Origin: Hypanus sabinus
Lineage: Eukaryota
Direction of reading: 5' to 3'
Length of the DNA stretch: 64,000 nt
Assembly: GCF_030144855.1 (NCBI RefSeq)
Contig: NC_082708.1
Span: 102,114,001-102,178,000 of the forward strand
Made by a program: the position numbers and the translations under genes. The notes beneath the pieces were generated by a model, which was given only the letters and a program-made list of their open reading frames with translations, made no database searches and was not told where the DNA came from. This document shows, piece by piece, positions 52,556 to 59,207 of this stretch; position 1 is the stretch's first letter, and each line of letters starts with the position of its first letter.

Positions 52556-53569
52556 TTCAGATTGAATTGTGAAGAAAATGGTCATTTTGCCACCTCTATA
52601 ATAGTGATTGTATTAGTGTAAAAAGTAAGTTGGGCAATATAGCATTTTAACTTTTGTATATACCTTTAAGAACATGTGTACCATGCAATTCAGTATTGTC
52701 ATATTGATGTCTGCTATTAGCTGAATGTTGTTAGTCTAGTTACTTGCCTGACTGAATCACAATATAGAAAATAACCTCTAAATGCTACAGAAAGAAAAAA
52801 AAATCAAAGATTTTGATTTATATTGCATCTTTCAAGACCTCAAAACATTTTAGGGTACTTTATAAAAAAGTGTAATATTTTCTGAAGTGTCACATGTGTT
52901 TGCAATGTAGTACGTGTGCAATATAGTGGTGGCATTGTAATGACCTTTTTTGACTGATTTTGATGGGAGTTTTACTCATTAGATTGATGAACCTTGAATA
53001 ACAAGCCAGTTGTAAAAGCTTCAATAAATATTGAGGAGGAACTGAAGTTTAATGTTCTGATTTCTACCATCTAATTTTGAGGACTTTTTATTTTTTTGTT
53101 CATACATGGAATTGCTGACAAGAAAATTATTTAATTCCTATCTGTAATTGCCCTTGAGAGAACAATTGCATTCTTGGATGGCTATAGTCCTTGTCATGAA
53201 GACGTGCAAAATGTTAAGAAGAAAATTCCAGGACTTAACCACTGCAGAGCGGTGCAATGTTTAAAAGCAAGTTGACAATTATAATAGAGTTGTCTTCTAA
53301 TTGTACCCAGCCTGAGAAAGTAAGCTTTGTTGAAACATAACTAAATCAAAAGGGCCTATTTCATGAACTATAGTTGTGAAGCCAACAAGTTAACCTAAAT
53401 GTGGCAAGTTAAGCTAAATGTGTTCATAACAGGAAGGCAATTAACACTTCCTCTTGTTTGTAGCAAAAAAGGAAATCTGATCTTTCAATGAATCAGCAAT
53501 CATGAGACAGCGCACCCTGATGTTTTCCTGATCATTGCGGGGGACTTCAACCAAGCCAGCTTGAAGCAG

Positions 53570-56167
53570 TTTTGTGGACGTGTCAGCATGTTTTGAATAG
53601 GAGCTGCGGAGACGAAGAACCTCGCATTCGGATGGCTATGTTCGGGACTATCAGTGAATTTGTGGAGGGAGCCGAGGACTGGCTGGAGTATGAGGAAAAG
53701 TTGGGACACTTTTTCTGTGCTTCTGGAATTACTGAGGAGGCTAAGAAGCACTCTATTCTCCTGAGTGTGTGCGGGGCAAAGACATACAAGTTGATAAGAA
53801 ACTTAGCCACCCCATAGAAACCAAGAGAAATTCCACATGACGAACTGGTCAAGCTCATGGTGAACCAACACAATCCGAAACCTTCGGTGATAGTCCAATG
53901 GTTCAAGTTTCACAGCCGTGTCCGAAAGCCAGGTCAGTCTGTGGCTAATTTTGTGGCTGAGCTTCAGCAGCTATCAGAGCATTGCAATTTCGGAGCCGTG
54001 TTGGATGACATGCTCCGTGTTAGATTAGTATGTGGCATTAATAATGACACCGTACAACGCCGCTTGTTGGGGGAAACCCCACCATCGACTTTCAAGACAG
54101 CCCTAGAGTTTGCCCAAGGCATGGAGATGGCTGCTGATAATGCCAAGGATATACAGAAAGGACATGGGGGGTCGCAGTCAGCGGCAGTGCTTCAGGTCAG
54201 GAGGGAGATTGGTAAACAGGCAAAGCAGGTGGAATGCTTTCAGTGTGGAGGGGCATACTATGCAAATGTTTGCAAATTAAAAGATACTGTCAAAAAGGGA
54301 CATTTAGCTAAAAAGTGCAGGAGCATAAAGGGTAAGGTTAAGCCTGGGCGGGGTAAAGCTCAACAGGTTCAGGCAGCCACACACCACCTAGGGGAAGCAG
54401 ACGAGGAGGCAGCGTGTGCCTACAACATGTCTGGGGTGGAAGTGGATGAGGAGCCACCTGAACCATATCATGCCATATCATGCCACAGTCACTGTCGGGG
54501 GAAGGACATTAAGTTTGAGATTGATATGGTGGTTACTGCATCGGTCATTAGTGAGGAGACCTACAGGAGGACATGGGGGTCCAACCTGCCTCCCATCAGA
54601 CAGTCAAAGCTCAAACTCAAGACCTATATGGGGCAGCCCGTACCTCATTAGGGGTGTTATATGTGGATATTTCAGCCAGGGGTCAGAAGGCTGAAGCCAG
54701 GCTGGTGATAGCTAAGGGCAGTGGGCGCAGTCTTTTGGGCCGCAATTGGCTTTGCAAAATCCGGCTCAACTGGCATGAAATTAAGTATGCACGCACGACG
54801 GAGGACATTCTGCAGTGGTATAGTGACGTTTTCAGGGATGAGCTGGGCACACTGAAGGGTGTGACTGTGAAACTCCATGTTGACCCTGAGGCCACACCAC
54901 GTTTTTTAAGCCCAGGTCGGTGCCCTATGCCATGAATGGCAGCTGGTACGTTTACAGAGGCTGGGCATCATTGAGCCCGTACAGTTTTCAAGGTGGGCGG
55001 CTCCTATTGTTCCAGTTTTGAAGGTAGATAAAACGGTGAGGATATGCGGAGACTACAAGCTTACGGTGAATCAGGTCTCTAAGCTGGAGGAGTTCCCATT
55101 GCCACGGGTGGATGACCTGTTTGCGACCCTGTCAGGGGGTAAGCTGTTCACAAAGCTGGACATGAGCCACACCTACCAACAGCTGCTGCTTGATGAGGGT
55201 TCAAAGGAGTACGTCACCATCAATACGCACAAGGGTTTATTCAAATACAATCACCTGGTGTTTGGAGTGGCGTCTAGCCCCGCCATTTTCCAAACGACAA
55301 TGGACTCTTTGCTGCAGGGGATTCCGCACACAGCAGTGTATCTTGATGATATTTTGATCACGGGAGCCATGGAGGGGGAGCATCTGGTTAATTTAGAACA
55401 GGTGCTGAAGAGACTCTCAGACGCAAGGCTGTGATTGAAACACAGAAAAGTTGTGTTCCTGGCTCCAAGTGTGACCTACCTGGGACACCAGATTACAGCT
55501 GAGGGGCTCTGCCCAGTGGAGGACAAAGTGAGAGCTATCAAGGAGGCCCCAAGCCCCAAGAGTGTCTCTGAACTCAGATCGTTTTTGGGAATGGTGAATT
55601 ATTATGGCAAGTTTCTTCTGGACTGTATAAGCTGCTTCACAATGACACTAAGTGGTGGTGGGGTGAAGAGCAGGAGGAAGCTTTCAAGGAAGTGAAAGAA
55701 CTCCTGCACTCAGCAAAGCTGCTCGTTCACTATGACCCAGAGAAGGAGATCACCCTTTCACACAACGCTTCACCCTATGGAGTCGGGGCAGTTCTCTCAC
55801 ACGTAATGGAGGACCGTTCAGAGAAGCCTATTGTTTTTGCTTCACATACCCTGACGGTGGCTGAGAAGGAATATTCACAGCTAGACAAAGAAGATCTGGC
55901 TGTTGCTTTTGCAGTCAAATGCTTTCATCAGTATCTCTATGGACGTGCATTCACAATTTATACGGACCATAAACTACTGATGAGCCTTTTTAGTCAGACC
56001 ACATGCATCCCACTGCTAGCCTCAGCCAGGATACAACATTGGGCTCCCACATTGTCAGACTATCAGTATACTATGGTGTACAGAATGGGTGGGGATAATG
56101 CAAACGCTGATGCGCTGAGTCGACTACCTTTACCTGAGATGCCTGTTACTACATATGTGCCTCCAGA
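53570..56167 (+). mobile_element. Gypsy element, plus-strand part: gag-PR-RT-RNase H, no 5' LTR
   Basis: EDWLEYEEKL...LLSVCG, FKFHSRVRKPGQSVANFVAEL, VRICGDYK, YLDD, ASPYGVGAVL, TDHK, NANADALSRLP. Confidence 0.95.
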
Positions 56168-58062
56168 TGTGGTAACTTCTGCTTTACAAAAGGACCACTC
56201 GACAAGTTCATGGCCAAAAGATCATCTTTATCTGGGGTGGCAAATGATATCGACAGTACAAAGGCTTTCAGGTACCTCGTGCAGCATGGGTGGTGGAACT
56301 ATATACAATGCATACCGGAAATAAAACCCTGCTGACCCCAGAATCAGCCTCTTGTTACCAACAGCTTCCTGATTAGTATTAACTTGCTTTTAATAATAGT
56401 CACGTTACAACACTTCTCCCCCTTTAAATTCCAACATACCCCAAACATAGAAGAACTAGGAAATAAAAGCAGTGGTATTGTTAACAGGTTACCAATACAA
56501 AACACCTAAGAAGGTGGCAAATTCAACATTCAATCTAACAACTTAAAAAAAACTATCCAATGAAAGATTCAGTTTGTCAGGAGGTTTGCAAGGGTGCTGT
56601 CATCTACGCACTACCCCCGGTGACCCGGAAGGCACCACCGGTGAGGATGTTTCGGGTGGATCTGGTGTTGGGGGCAGGAGAAGGGTCAGTGTATCTGTGT
56701 GAGGATGCCCATCCTCTTCAGGGGACTCTGCACCCTCGGCCAGCATCTCTCCCTCAGGCAAAGTCACTGGTGGACACACTTCCCTAGTAGTCTGTCTTAC
56801 CATTGGGAACTCCACGGAACTGTCTACCTCTGAGCCGGAATCATGATGCAAGTGCACATGGTCCTGATGACTGCGGAAAACACGCCCATCAGTCAGCTTA
56901 ACACCATAGGAGACTGGACCACTCTGCTAAAGAATAACCCCAGGTAGCCATTGCTGATTATTGCTACTGCTGAAGTTTCTCTCATAGACAATTGTCATCC
57001 AGTTTTAACTGTTTCTCTAGTGCATGTTGATCATGTCCTCCTTCTGCTTTTCCTACTTTCTCTCCATTTTCGCCTTCATGTCCAGGCGCAGCAGGTCCAA
57101 TCTTGACTTAGGCCTACACCTCATCAGCATCTTTGCTGGAGTGTGTGCGGTTGTAGTTGGTGGTGTGAGGTGGTACTTAAACAGGAAACGTGAAAGTCGG
57201 GTACTAAGAGAGTCCCCTGTCATCCGCTTCAGGCCTTCCTTCACTGTCTGAACAGCCCGCTCAGCCAAACCATTTGAGGCTGGGTGGAAAGGGGCCGTCT
57301 GAATGTGACAAATGCCATTCTGCCCAATGAACTCACCGAACAGCTCACTGGTGAACATCGGGCCATTATCAGTGACCAGAGAGTCAGGCAATCCGTGGAC
57401 TGCAAACACTTGCCTGAGTTTGTCTATGGTTGAGGGGGCTGTGTTGTTGCTCATGATGTGAGTTTTGATCCATTTGGAGTGCACATCTACCATTACAAGA
57501 AACATCTGCCCCATAAAAGGGCCAGTAAAGTCCAAATGTAGCCTAGACCAGGGGTAGACTGGCCACTCCCATGGGTGCAAAGGAGCTGGTGGTGGCATCT
57601 TCTGATTGGTCTGACATTGCATTGCATGTTCTCCAGACCCTGATCCATTCTTGGCCACCAGATATAGGATCTTGCAAGGCTTTTCAATGGAGACACCCCT
57701 GGGTGAGTCTCATGAATTTCCTCCAAAATCTGTGAATGGCCAGGGGGAGGCATGATGACCCTCGCCCCCCAGAAAATGCAGCCATCCTGCAAACTCTATT
57801 CCATCTTGTGTTTGGCATAAGGCCTCAGTTCCTCTCCTTCCATGACTCTGGGCCAACCTTGTAAAAGGAAAGTCTTGACTTGAGACAGGACTGGGTCCCT
57901 CTCTGTCCATTGCTTGATCTGGGTCACCTTTACTGGTGTCTCTGACAGCCTGTCCAATGAAAACACTGTCTCTGGAGGCACATGTGTAGTAAACAGGCAT
58001 CTCAGGTAAAGGGAGTCGACTTAGTGCATCGGCGTTTGCATTATCCCCACCCACTATGTACA
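56168..58062 (-). mobile_element. Gypsy element, inverted part: end of RNase H, integrase, PPT (56413-56427) and complete LTR (56168-56412)
   Basis: HETHPGV...ARSYIWWP, PWSRLHLDF.GP, VTDNGPMF, HPASNGLAERAVQTVK. Minus-strand aaagggggagaag|TGTTGTAAC...GTTACCACA. Confidence 0.95.
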
Positions 58063-58396
58063 TGCACTTAACCACTGTTTTACCACCATCAAGAATGTTT
58101 ATCATCCTATCCCACGCCTACATTTTTGCAAGTCTGATCACCTGGCTGTACTTCTACTCCTGGTGCACACACAGAGAATGAGGACCATAAAGGTATAGTC
58201 AAGGGAGCGCAAGAGTGCTTACAGGACTATTGTGAATCAGTGGAATTGATAATATTCGGGGACTCATCTTCAAATTTGAATGAATTTGCTGCAGTTTTCA
58301 CAAACTTCATCGAGACATTTAAGGATGAATTTGTGCCTTTGAGAACATCCTAGACATACCCAACAAGATGCCATGGGTGACCTGTGAGATTTATAG

Positions 58397-59207
58397 TGTT
58401 ACGAACACCATAACTGGGTCACTTACCAGCAAAGATAGAGAGGTCCGTTGAAGTCTGATGGTACTATTTTTAACAGTATTTATTGATAAAAATACACAAA
58501 ATAATATCAATGCAAACATACAGATAATCTATGTCATCAATACTAAATCTAAAAGCGTGGGTATAATAATAATCGATAAGGAATAGCTCTAATGTTGTCT
58601 AGGGGATAATGTATTATCCAATGGAAATATAAAAGTCACTCAAGTTCATTCAAGCTGCAGCTTTTTGGTTGGAGAGAGAGACGGAGGTTTAACTTGCCCG
58701 TTCCTTTTATGATGTCAATCCTTCGAGAGCCGTCGGGGACTGGTTTCCCCTTTGTTGTTAGCTAAAGCCATACTCCCGTGGTACAGGCCCACCAATTTCG
58801 AGGCAAATGGAAAAGGACGCACGTGGGCTTTTCCACCGGCTTTCGTTATTACGCTGTTACAGGAGTTCTAGCATTGCTTCTGGTGCGTCTGAAGGGGTTG
58901 TTCCCCAGACCCACTTTTATCCTGACTCACAGGGTCTCAGATGTCAATCAGGTTGGGAGGATGCAATCCCTCCACCAACCCCCCTCGGTTCATTGCCTGG
59001 GGGCTTCGATGAATCATACAGTATTCAATACCCAATTCCATCTCCAAGAGACAATAGCCATTATCAACGGCTCCGCCTTTCGGAGGCCAAGACACATTCC
59101 AAACTCTTTGTGGATTCTGCATGTCTTTCTCTCATTTCCTGGGTCTCCTGACCTGACTTAATAGTGATCTTGCGATTCTCAAAAAGGAGGGGGCCACGGG
59201 CGTAACA
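58397..59207 (-). mobile_element. Solo LTR (811 bp)
   Basis: Terminal inverted TGTTACG...CGTAACA; 4-bp TSD atag/acag; AATAAA on minus near 58480; interrupts the Rex1-like LINE. Confidence 0.85.

What the first reader, a model, noticed from the sequence alone, without database searches (positions are those of the whole stretch)
53570..58062. Gypsy cDNA whose 3' LTR end is joined, inverted, into its own pol: candidate single-end autointegration product captured in the chromosome
Seen in sequence: on the minus strand the insert reads [last ~91 bp of RNase H/linker]-integrase-PPT-complete LTR ending ...ACCACA. It then continues with no spacer into antisense pol of the same family (junction ctccaga|TGTGGTAAC at 56167/56168) and runs back to the gag leader. 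The ~91 bp before the junction occur twice, inverted (56077-56167 and 57971-58062; about 8 differences by eye). Neither outer end has an LTR or TSD, and the host Rex1-like LINE appears to have lost roughly 50 bp between ...ASLK and LNHC. Established: integrase joins the LTR CA-3' end to target DNA, and autointegration into the opposite strand creates inversions. Inference: this is the continuous strand expected if only one LTR end attacks its own cDNA. A fragment of that suicide product was then patched into a break without integrase and inherited.
Basis: partly seen in the sequence, partly recalled or inferred. Interest (0 to 1): 0.85.

Follow-up and report, generated by a model that had tools for sequence, protein, structure and literature searches.

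The report
Captured suicide product of a Gypsy retrotransposon
A decayed 4.5-kb piece of a stingray Gypsy retrotransposon, whose LTR tip is joined upside-down into its own polymerase gene, looks like a failed self-integration by-product that was patched into a chromosome break and inherited; it is a neat molecular fossil with no sign of function.

Summary
On the + strand, 53570-56167 holds leader-gag-PR-RT-RNase H. It abuts, with no spacer, the exact TG terminus of an inverted 245-bp LTR (56168-56412). PPT, integrase and an RNase H tail follow, ending at 58062. The two halves overlap by an inverted 92 columns (7 substitutions, 1 indel). There is no outer LTR and no TSD. The host LINE lost about 38 bp, not about 50.

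New points:
- The left end starts 1-2 nt after the family's PBS, so the 5' LTR and PBS are missing.
- The central junction lacks the 6-nt spacer that separates CA from the PBS. This indicates a processed CA end, which fits integrase better than end joining or RT run-off.
- The overlap begins at the element's only internal copy of the PPT core motif. It may therefore be a plus-strand overlap ("central flap"), the structure Ty1 autointegration targets.
- A contig from a related species spans the left junction at 95% identity, so the insertion is old.

Limits: no independent read or contig spans the central junction. Same-molecule origin rests on 92 bp (3 versus 5 private changes, 1 shared minority variant, 1 conflicting site).

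Verdict: autointegration-type by-product captured at a break, about 0.5. It combines two known processes in a new way. The scan holds no earlier report of it.

The parts
53470..53570 (+). Left flank: endonuclease-domain part of the host LINE (...IIAGDFNQASLKQ). Sequence left of about 53467 is single-copy.
   Evidence: Translation. Depth jumps from single-copy to repeat level at about 53467 (table 2). Other LINE copies align up to 53566-53572 (table 5).
53567..53572 (+). Left outer junction between the LINE and the retroelement leader. G/TT is shared by both partners, giving 2-3 nt of microhomology.
   Evidence: The window reads ...GAAGCAG|TTTTGTGG. LINE copies continue ...CAGT+CTCTGAC (table 5c). 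The family leader reads ...CTGG+TTTTGT (table 7).
53570..53632 (+). Leader remnant of the Gypsy element. It starts about 26 nt after the 5' LTR end, which is 1-2 nt 3' of the PBS (TGGCGACAAGGTGAAC..). The 5' LTR, the spacer TATTTT and the PBS are absent.
   Evidence: Loose-end consensus before 56167 in four runs. Sister families L004 and L005 show LTR..ACCACA+TATTTT+TGGCGAC.., and window 53570.. aligns just after that. An X20 contig has 76 nt between the LTR end and 53620.
53633..56167 (+). Half A: degenerate gag-protease-RT-RNase H, with at least 2 in-frame stops and at least 3 frameshifts. It ends at point P, 56167.
   Evidence: ORFs; Pfam RVT_1 and RT_RNaseH. Normal copies continue from 56167 into the sequence found at 57970 downwards (joint 56167<->57970; loose ends 'behind 56167').
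56077..56167 (+). Overlap copy A (RNase H C-terminus, ..GGDNANADALSRLPLPEMPV..).
56091..56100 (+). PPT-like motif GGGGATAATG, 14 nt inside the overlap. Its mirror copy is at 58048-58039 on the - strand. Candidate internal (central) PPT.
   Evidence: GGGGA-N-AA-(N)-TG occurs in the element only here and at the 3' PPT, plus once more in both strands of the whole window.
56167..56168 (.). Central junction. On the - strand the LTR ends ...GTTACCACA and is joined directly to antisense pol (TCTGGAGG...). None of the TATTTT spacer is present, with a 1-nt ambiguity (T).
   Evidence: The LTR terminus is defined by random-flank loose ends 'before 56168'.
56168..56412 (-). Complete 245-bp LTR, TG...CA, with an imperfect 9-nt terminal inverted repeat.
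   Evidence: Border clusters at 56168 and 56412.
56413..56425 (-). 3' polypurine tract AAAGGGGGAGAAG.
56426..57970 (-). Half B interior: integrase (rve core 57658-57056) and the C-terminal region. Degenerate, with stops and frameshifts.
57971..58062 (-). Overlap copy B. This is the outer (5') end of half B, at P-91.
58063..58400 (+). Right outer junction with 1 nt of filler (T at 58063), then the host LINE resumes at 58064 (ALNHCFTTIKNVYHPIPRLHFCKSDH). It is colinear and in frame with the left flank once the 38 missing nt are restored.
   Evidence: translation, table 5c.

Best explanation
This is a dead-end by-product of Ty3/Gypsy reverse transcription that was captured in a chromosome break.

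Shown:
- The insert is one LTR-bearing right half (P-91 to the U5 end) joined at the exact CA terminus of its LTR to the opposite strand of pol at P.
- From P the left half runs backwards to the 3' edge of the PBS.
- The insert sits in a LINE that lost about 38 bp, with no TSD.

Inferred:
- Integrase processed the U5 end by removing the TATTTT spacer that lies between CA and the PBS. It then transferred the CA-3'OH to the minus strand of its own, or a sibling, cDNA at the RNase H/integrase boundary. This is inversion-type autointegration by a single end.
- The 92-nt overlap is most simply the overlap between two plus-strand segments. The downstream segment is primed at an internal PPT-like motif at the start of the overlap, and the upstream segment stops at P. 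Strand transfer opposite that discontinuity gives a linear, inverted molecule. One of its ends carries the 92-nt flap, which is filled in.
- The far end at the PBS edge marks where minus-strand synthesis or its template ends.
- The linear product was then joined into a germ-line double-strand break by end joining, without integrase. It has decayed for roughly 4% per lineage since.
For: (1) The junction lies exactly at the LTR terminus. That terminus is defined independently by contigs of four runs that diverge into unrelated flanks at 56168.
(2) Normal copies and two sister families have CA+TATTTT+PBS. The junction carries none of TATTTT. End-joined Ty1 cDNA ends in yeast usually keep their cDNA-only extra nucleotides (40 of 56; PMC11372161).
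(3) The left end lies 1-2 nt after the PBS. Chance expectation for a hit within a few nt of any replication landmark in about 5 kb is around 1%.
(4) The overlap starts 14 nt before the only internal copy of the PPT core motif. Ty1 autointegration is reported to occur near the cPPT using the DNA flap (Garfinkel 2006 as cited in PMC7197481). [quoted passage not shown]
(5) The outer junctions show a 38-bp host loss, microhomology, filler and no TSD.
(6) Nothing suggests the halves differ in age. In the overlap there are 3 A-private and 5 B-private changes, plus 1 minority variant (T at 56086, 0-17% of the family) shared by both. Near-fixed private differences run at 6.5 per kb in A and 7.4 per kb in B in the listed rows. 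Disabling mutations have similar density.
(7) The left junction is present in a related species' contig, and the two arms differ at 8 sites, so this is not a fold-back read artefact.
Against: - No independent contig or read bridges the central junction.
- Same-molecule origin is untested beyond 92 bp. At 56126 versus 58013 the two copies carry alternative states of a site that is polymorphic in the family (A copy = minority state in species J/L/M, fixed in run X13).
- CpG depletion differs between halves (observed/expected 0.42 in A, 0.25 in B).
- Purine-rich stretches are common in the element. The PPT-like motif lies in a conserved, purine-rich coding motif (RxGxDN) in sister families too, so its position may be coincidence.
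- Removal of 6 nt by integrase is inferred, not known for this family.
- How the product became fully double-stranded is speculative.
Confidence: 0.5

Rival explanations
1. End joining without integrase. A linear cDNA, or replication intermediate, broke at its central plus-strand discontinuity. Its two halves were ligated in inverted order, P end to U5 end, and patched into the break in one multi-fragment NHEJ event.
For: All four fragment ends sit at candidate replication landmarks: the PBS edge, P, P-91 and the U5 end. Capture of Ty1 cDNA and its intermediates at breaks is well documented. The outer junctions are of NHEJ type.
Against: The U5 end at the junction is trimmed exactly to CA (+0/1 nt), although the family has a 6-nt spacer before the PBS. 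End-joined Ty1 cDNA ends mostly keep such extra nucleotides. The model needs three ligations in one repair event.
Confidence: 0.15
2. Ordinary chromosomal history. One copy integrated normally, in inverse orientation, into the pol of a resident copy. The present fragment is either what deletions left behind, or a piece of such a nested locus copied into the LINE as a templated repair patch.
For: Nested insertions are common in this TE-rich genome and the family has thousands of copies. A normal integration also gives an exact CA junction. One overlap site carries different family-polymorphic states in A and B.
Against: The LINE flanks are colinear with only about 38 bp missing, so in-place deletions would have had to end within 38 bp of the original site on both sides. 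It explains neither the PBS-edge end nor the fact that half B starts only 91 nt upstream of the insertion point (about 4% by chance). The inserted half B is not younger than the target half A (5 versus 3 private changes; CpG o/e 0.25 versus 0.42).
Confidence: 0.12
3. Reverse-transcriptase template switch. Plus-strand synthesis ran off the 5' end of the minus-strand template and jumped onto a plus-sense template ending at P. It copied that template back to the tRNA-occupied PBS. No integrase was involved.
For: It accounts for a junction at a template end and for the stop at the PBS edge. End-to-end jumping by RTs is established general knowledge.
Against: Run-off at the minus-strand 5' end should include the TATTTT spacer, and usually the PBS copy. 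Neither is present.
Confidence: 0.05
4. Assembly artefact: a chimeric join of two repeat copies.
For: The central junction could not be confirmed in any other data set. The family is highly repeated.
Against: The break lies exactly at an LTR terminus. The two arms differ at 8 of 92 columns. The flanks are one colinear LINE. The left junction is bridged by a contig of another species.
Confidence: 0.03

Closest known systems
Inversion-type autointegration ('suicide') products of retroviruses and LTR retrotransposons. Examples: MoMLV inverted circles; Ty1 (Garfinkel et al. 2006); SISYPHUS in Arabidopsis VLPs (PMC7197481); 1-LTR rearranged circles of nomad, HMS-Beagle and mdg3 in Drosophila testis (PMC12951756); MAGGY in Magnaporthe (PMC9694575).
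   Same: An LTR terminus is joined to internal sequence of the same element in the opposite orientation. The junction is at the processed CA end. The position near a candidate internal PPT or flap matches the Ty1 case.
   Different: The known products are extrachromosomal circles, or reads from VLP or ecDNA preparations. This one is a linear 4.5-kb piece fixed in a vertebrate germ-line chromosome. Only one LTR end is joined. The overlap is 92 bp instead of a 4-6 bp target duplication, and there is no 5' LTR.
Capture of retrotransposon cDNA at double-strand breaks by NHEJ. Examples: Ty1 in yeast (Teng, Moore and Gabriel work as cited in PMC11372161 and PMC1976456) and retrotransposon or mRNA-derived inserts at CRISPR breaks in mouse zygotes (PMC4516963).
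   Same: No TSD, a small target deletion, and microhomology or filler at the junctions. Fragment ends lie at replication landmarks (PBS, central priming site, LTR end).
   Different: Reported inserts are mostly simple colinear fragments. Here the captured molecule carries an internal LTR-end/antisense-pol junction and is an ancient inherited allele.
Central DNA flap (cPPT-CTS plus-strand overlap) of HIV-1 (about 99 nt, from my own knowledge) and of Ty1 (PPT2).
   Same: The overlap is about 92 nt, lies in the middle of the element, and begins at a motif resembling the 3' PPT.
   Different: Nothing shows a plus-strand discontinuity in this family. The overlap is inferred from one rearranged fossil.
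Ordinary nested LTR-retrotransposon insertion.
   Same: An LTR CA end abuts internal sequence of another copy.
   Different: There is no second LTR of the inner copy, no TSD in pol, and no remainder of the outer copy. The host flanks are almost contiguous.

Membership tests
Ty3/Gypsy LTR retrotransposon | Domain order protease-RT-RNase H-integrase | tested here: met
   RVT_1 then RT_RNaseH on half A and rve on half B. Normal copies join 56167 to 57970.
Ty3/Gypsy LTR retrotransposon | LTR with TG..CA ends, an adjacent PPT, and a PBS after the 5' LTR | tested here: met
   LTR and PPT are present in the window. The PBS (TGGCGAC..) is seen in same-family contigs and sister families, but is missing from this copy.
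Autointegration product (inversion type) | Junction at the processed CA-3' end of an LTR | tested here: met
   ACCACA is joined directly to pol antisense, and the TATTTT spacer of the family is absent. There is a 1-nt ambiguity.
Autointegration product (inversion type) | Target is internal sequence of the same element, on the opposite strand | tested here: met
   The target is the RNase H C-terminus of the same family, and the overlap is 91% identical.
Autointegration product (inversion type) | Both parts derive from one cDNA molecule | tested here: inconclusive
   Over 92 bp: 3 versus 5 private changes, 1 shared minority variant, and 1 site with different family-polymorphic states.
Autointegration product (concerted inversion circle) | Second LTR end joined at the same site with a 4-6 bp target duplication | tested here: not met
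   The overlap is 92 bp, and host LINE rather than a 5' LTR follows 58062. Only a single-end event fits.
NHEJ capture of extrachromosomal DNA at a break | No TSD, a target deletion, and microhomology or filler at both junctions | tested here: met
   About 38 bp of the LINE is missing, there is G/TT microhomology on the left and 1 nt of filler on the right.
Nested LTR-retrotransposon insertion | Inner element complete with two LTRs and a TSD inside the outer element | tested here: not met
   There is one LTR only, and no other copy or LTR of the family anywhere in the window.
Central PPT / DNA flap | Internal copy of the PPT at the start of the plus-strand overlap | tested here: inconclusive
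   The core motif is shared only with the 3' PPT. However, it lies in a conserved purine-rich coding motif, and loose purine-rich windows are common.
Central PPT / DNA flap | Physical plus-strand discontinuity in replicating cDNA | not testable with these tools
   This needs VLP or ecDNA sequencing of an active relative.

The most novel reading that the evidence does not exclude
The 92-bp inverted overlap is a fossil of a central DNA flap. On this reading, this vertebrate Ty3/Gypsy family primes a second plus strand at an internal PPT at the RNase H/integrase boundary, and its integrase attacked that flap, as Ty1 does. The resulting linear 'suicide' molecule entered the germ line through break repair. 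Genomes would then keep readable records of retroelement replication intermediates, from which cPPT, CTS and PBS termini can be mapped without any biochemistry.
Probability: 0.25. Interest if true: 0.65.

Novelty: new variant of a known kind. Interest (0 to 1): 0.47.

Why it matters
Autointegration is known as a dead end seen in virus-like particles and in extrachromosomal DNA. Break repair is known to swallow retrotransposon cDNA. A chromosomal, inherited copy of an autointegration product would link the two. It would show that 'suicide' DNA made in germ cells can still reach the genome. It would also give a way to read replication landmarks (PBS stop, internal plus-strand start and stop, end processing) of extinct elements from genome sequence alone. 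The practical value is modest: this is one decayed, non-functional locus, and the key inference about molecule identity and integrase is indirect.

Tried and rejected
1. Same-family reference copies. The window has no other copy. Protein-guided fetching gave only sister families at 70-78% DNA identity (L001-L006). The ray chromosome records (Hypanus, Mobula) could not be delivered because the files are too large. So there is no kilobase-scale subfamily test of the two halves.
2. Independent confirmation of the central junction. The last read-laying run on 56040-56215 in four runs found no bridging contig. Contigs there are only 60-157 nt, so this is a hole, not a refutation. A protein search with the junction-spanning ORF found only RNase H-tail matches.
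3. No run of the source species was found. The best holders of the unique flank have 0.38-0.52 of its words.
4. The joint '53620<->56167, opposite strands' first suggested that 53570-53619 was foreign filler. I rejected this. It is the normal 5' LTR-to-leader continuity, with a poorly conserved 76-nt leader.
5. A loose purine-tract scan is not specific, with 31 hits. Only the exact PPT core motif is.
6. CpG depletion as a clock is not interpretable, because the starting composition is unknown.
7. The Garfinkel 2006 paper itself is not held. I cite it only through PMC7197481.
8. Earlier scan notes: nothing on autointegration or break capture.
Full report
**Observation**

Reading the window and its ORFs confirms the layout.
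- On the + strand, 53570-56167 holds a leader and a degenerate gag-protease-RT-RNase H. Pfam finds RVT_1 and RT_RNaseH.
- At 56167/56168 this runs, without spacer, into TGTGGTAAC. That is the reverse complement of the end of a 245-bp LTR (56168-56412, - strand). The LTR reads TGTTGTAAC...GTTACCACA and is preceded by the polypurine tract AAAGGGGGAGAAG.
- Integrase follows further right on the - strand (rve core 57658-57056). Then comes the last 92 nt of RNase H (58062-57971).
- That last stretch is an inverted copy of 56077-56167: 92 columns, 7 substitutions and 1 indel, blastn E=1e-30.
- The window holds no other copy of the family.

**What the family normally looks like**

Contigs of eight public runs from related species were laid on the region. 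The scan's own notes and protein hits to Hypanus and Mobula say the genome is a stingray.
- The family has thousands of copies.
- Normal copies continue from 56167 into the sequence found at 57970 downwards. This shows as the joint 56167<->57970 and as a loose-end consensus GACTGTGTTTTCATTGG behind 56167.
- Contigs that end in unrelated flanks cluster at 56168 and at 56412. These are therefore the true LTR termini.
- Contigs carrying a 5' LTR continue after ...ACCACA with T ATTTT TGGCGACAAGGTGAAC TGG TTTTGT (four runs).
- Two sister families fetched as Logan contigs (L004 and L005, 70-73% DNA identity) have the same architecture: ACCACA, TATTTT, then TGGCGAC... So a TGG-initiated PBS lies 6 nt after the LTR.

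**The four ends**

1. Left outer end. Window 53570 (TTTTGTGGACG...) aligns to the leader immediately 3' of that PBS, both in same-family contigs and in L004 and L005. Half A therefore lacks the 5' LTR, the spacer and the PBS, and starts 1-2 nt after the PBS.
2. Central junction. The LTR ends at CA and none of the TATTTT spacer is present. One T is ambiguous.
3. Target point P (56167). It lies at the RNase H/integrase boundary.
4. Right outer end (58062). It lies 91 nt upstream of P in element coordinates. Fourteen nt inside it sits GGGGATAATG. The pattern GGGGA-N-AA-(N)-TG occurs in the element only here and at the 3' PPT, and only once more in both strands of the 64-kb window.

**Host site**

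The flanks translate as one LINE endonuclease domain...IIAGDFNQASLKQ on the left and ALNHCFTTIKNVYHPIPRLHFCKSDH on the right. Other copies of that LINE in related species carry 38 nt between 53570 and 58064/5, which restores the reading frame (table 5c). The insertion therefore removed about 38 bp and made no TSD. G/TT is shared at the left junction, and one unassigned T sits at the right one. This is the signature of end joining at a break, not of integrase.

**Age and reality**

- A 534-nt contig of run X20 covers 53300-53641 colinearly, with 18 mismatches and no gaps. Sequence left of 53467 is single-copy there.
- Runs of the same coded organism (J) and of two others (L and M) hold 0.38-0.52 of the words of the unique flank.
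- The left junction thus exists in a relative that differs by a few percent, so the insertion predates that split.
- The two overlap copies differ by 8.7%, or about 4% per lineage if they were identical at insertion. That is compatible with this age.
- The central junction could not be checked. No contig bridges it (contigs there are 60-157 nt long), and a protein search with the junction-spanning ORF found nothing across it.
- An assembly artefact is nevertheless unlikely. The break is at an exact LTR terminus, the arms differ at 8 positions, and the flanks are one LINE.

**Are the halves one molecule?**

Only the overlap allows a direct test.
- Three differences are private to copy A: 56085, 56108 (a CpG site) and 56126.
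- Five are private to copy B, including the indel.
- At 56086 both copies carry T, where 83-100% of family contigs carry C.
- Against this, at 56126/58013 the two copies carry alternative states of a site that is polymorphic in the family.
- Among the best-supported near-fixed private differences listed, the density is 6.5 per kb in half A and 7.4 per kb in half B. Stops and frameshifts have similar density.
- Half B, the 'inserting' partner, is not younger than half A by any measure (CpG o/e 0.25 versus 0.42).
- Taken together this fits a contemporaneous origin and speaks mildly against insertion into an old resident copy. It does not prove one molecule.

**Mechanism**

- The outer junctions and the nearly intact host site make in-place nested insertion plus deletions very unlikely. 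A free DNA fragment was captured.
- Its inner junction is what integrase makes when the processed CA-3'OH of U5 attacks the opposite strand of the element's own DNA. This is inversion-type autointegration, known from retroviruses, Ty1, plant and fungal elements and Drosophila testis.
- A concerted two-end event is excluded, because the overlap is 92 bp and no 5' LTR follows.
- The missing TATTTT argues for integrase processing rather than end joining or RT run-off. In yeast, 40 of 56 end-joined Ty1 3' LTR ends kept cDNA-only extra nucleotides (PMC11372161).
I think it is better explained as a plus-strand overlap. A downstream plus strand is primed at the internal PPT-like motif, and an upstream strand ends at P.
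- Strand transfer to the minus strand opposite that discontinuity directly yields a linear inverted molecule with a 92-nt flap at one end. Filling in the flap gives the inverted duplication.
- Ty1 autointegration is reported to use just such a flap near its cPPT (Garfinkel 2006 as cited in PMC7197481). [quoted passage not shown]
- This part is inference. Loose purine-rich windows are common in the element, and the motif lies in a conserved purine-rich coding stretch in sister families.

**Rivals**

- End joining of the two natural halves without integrase: 0.15.
- A chromosomal nested pair as the source: 0.12.
- An RT template jump: 0.05.
- An assembly error: 0.03.

**Verdict**

It combines two known processes in a way I did not find reported in the paper library. 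It is a single decayed locus without function, so the interest is moderate.

Noticed in passing
L004:1527-1560 and L005:438-471; same-family contigs at window 56167 (loose ends): A 6-nt spacer TATTTT between the LTR CA end and a TGGCGAC.. PBS is conserved in this family and in two sister families that are only 70-73% identical. If the primer is a tRNA 3' end, the cDNA would carry 6 extra nt that integrase must trim, which is unusually long.
   Followed up: partly
P0002 (L003:10001-11008), P0124, P0007: The closest named relatives of the integrase and gag pieces include teleost proteins at identities similar to or above those of ray proteins. Examples are Centropristis striata at 79% aa for integrase and Siganus at 65% for gag. 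The family group is shared between rays and bony fishes, and horizontal transfer is conceivable.
   Followed up: no
L002 (ENA contig labelled human gut metagenome): A 2.8-kb contig from a human gut metagenome assembly carries a Gypsy RNase H-integrase-PPT region 75% identical to this element, plus an Ig_VWA7-like ORF. It is probably dietary fish or other animal DNA in the sample.
   Followed up: no
window 55619-55623 and 57620-57627: Contigs of other copies carry about 23-30 extra letters at these two points. This copy therefore has small private deletions, which cause the frameshifts in RT and in integrase.
   Followed up: partly
window 56075: This site is tri-allelic in the family (G here, A or C elsewhere). 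Many short contigs start at 56076, two nt from the homologue of half B's outer end. I read this as a graph break at a variable site, not as truncated copies, but did not test it.
   Followed up: no
same genome, other pieces (notes s1-207049, s1-236316, s1-146822): First-stage notes list other Gypsy copies with inverted cores or inverted LTRs in this genome. If real, some could be further autointegration-type products.
   Followed up: no
window 53467: The host LINE fragment starts only about 100 bp left of the insertion, and sequence further left is single-copy in related species. The LINE is therefore 5'-truncated inside its endonuclease domain.
   Followed up: partly
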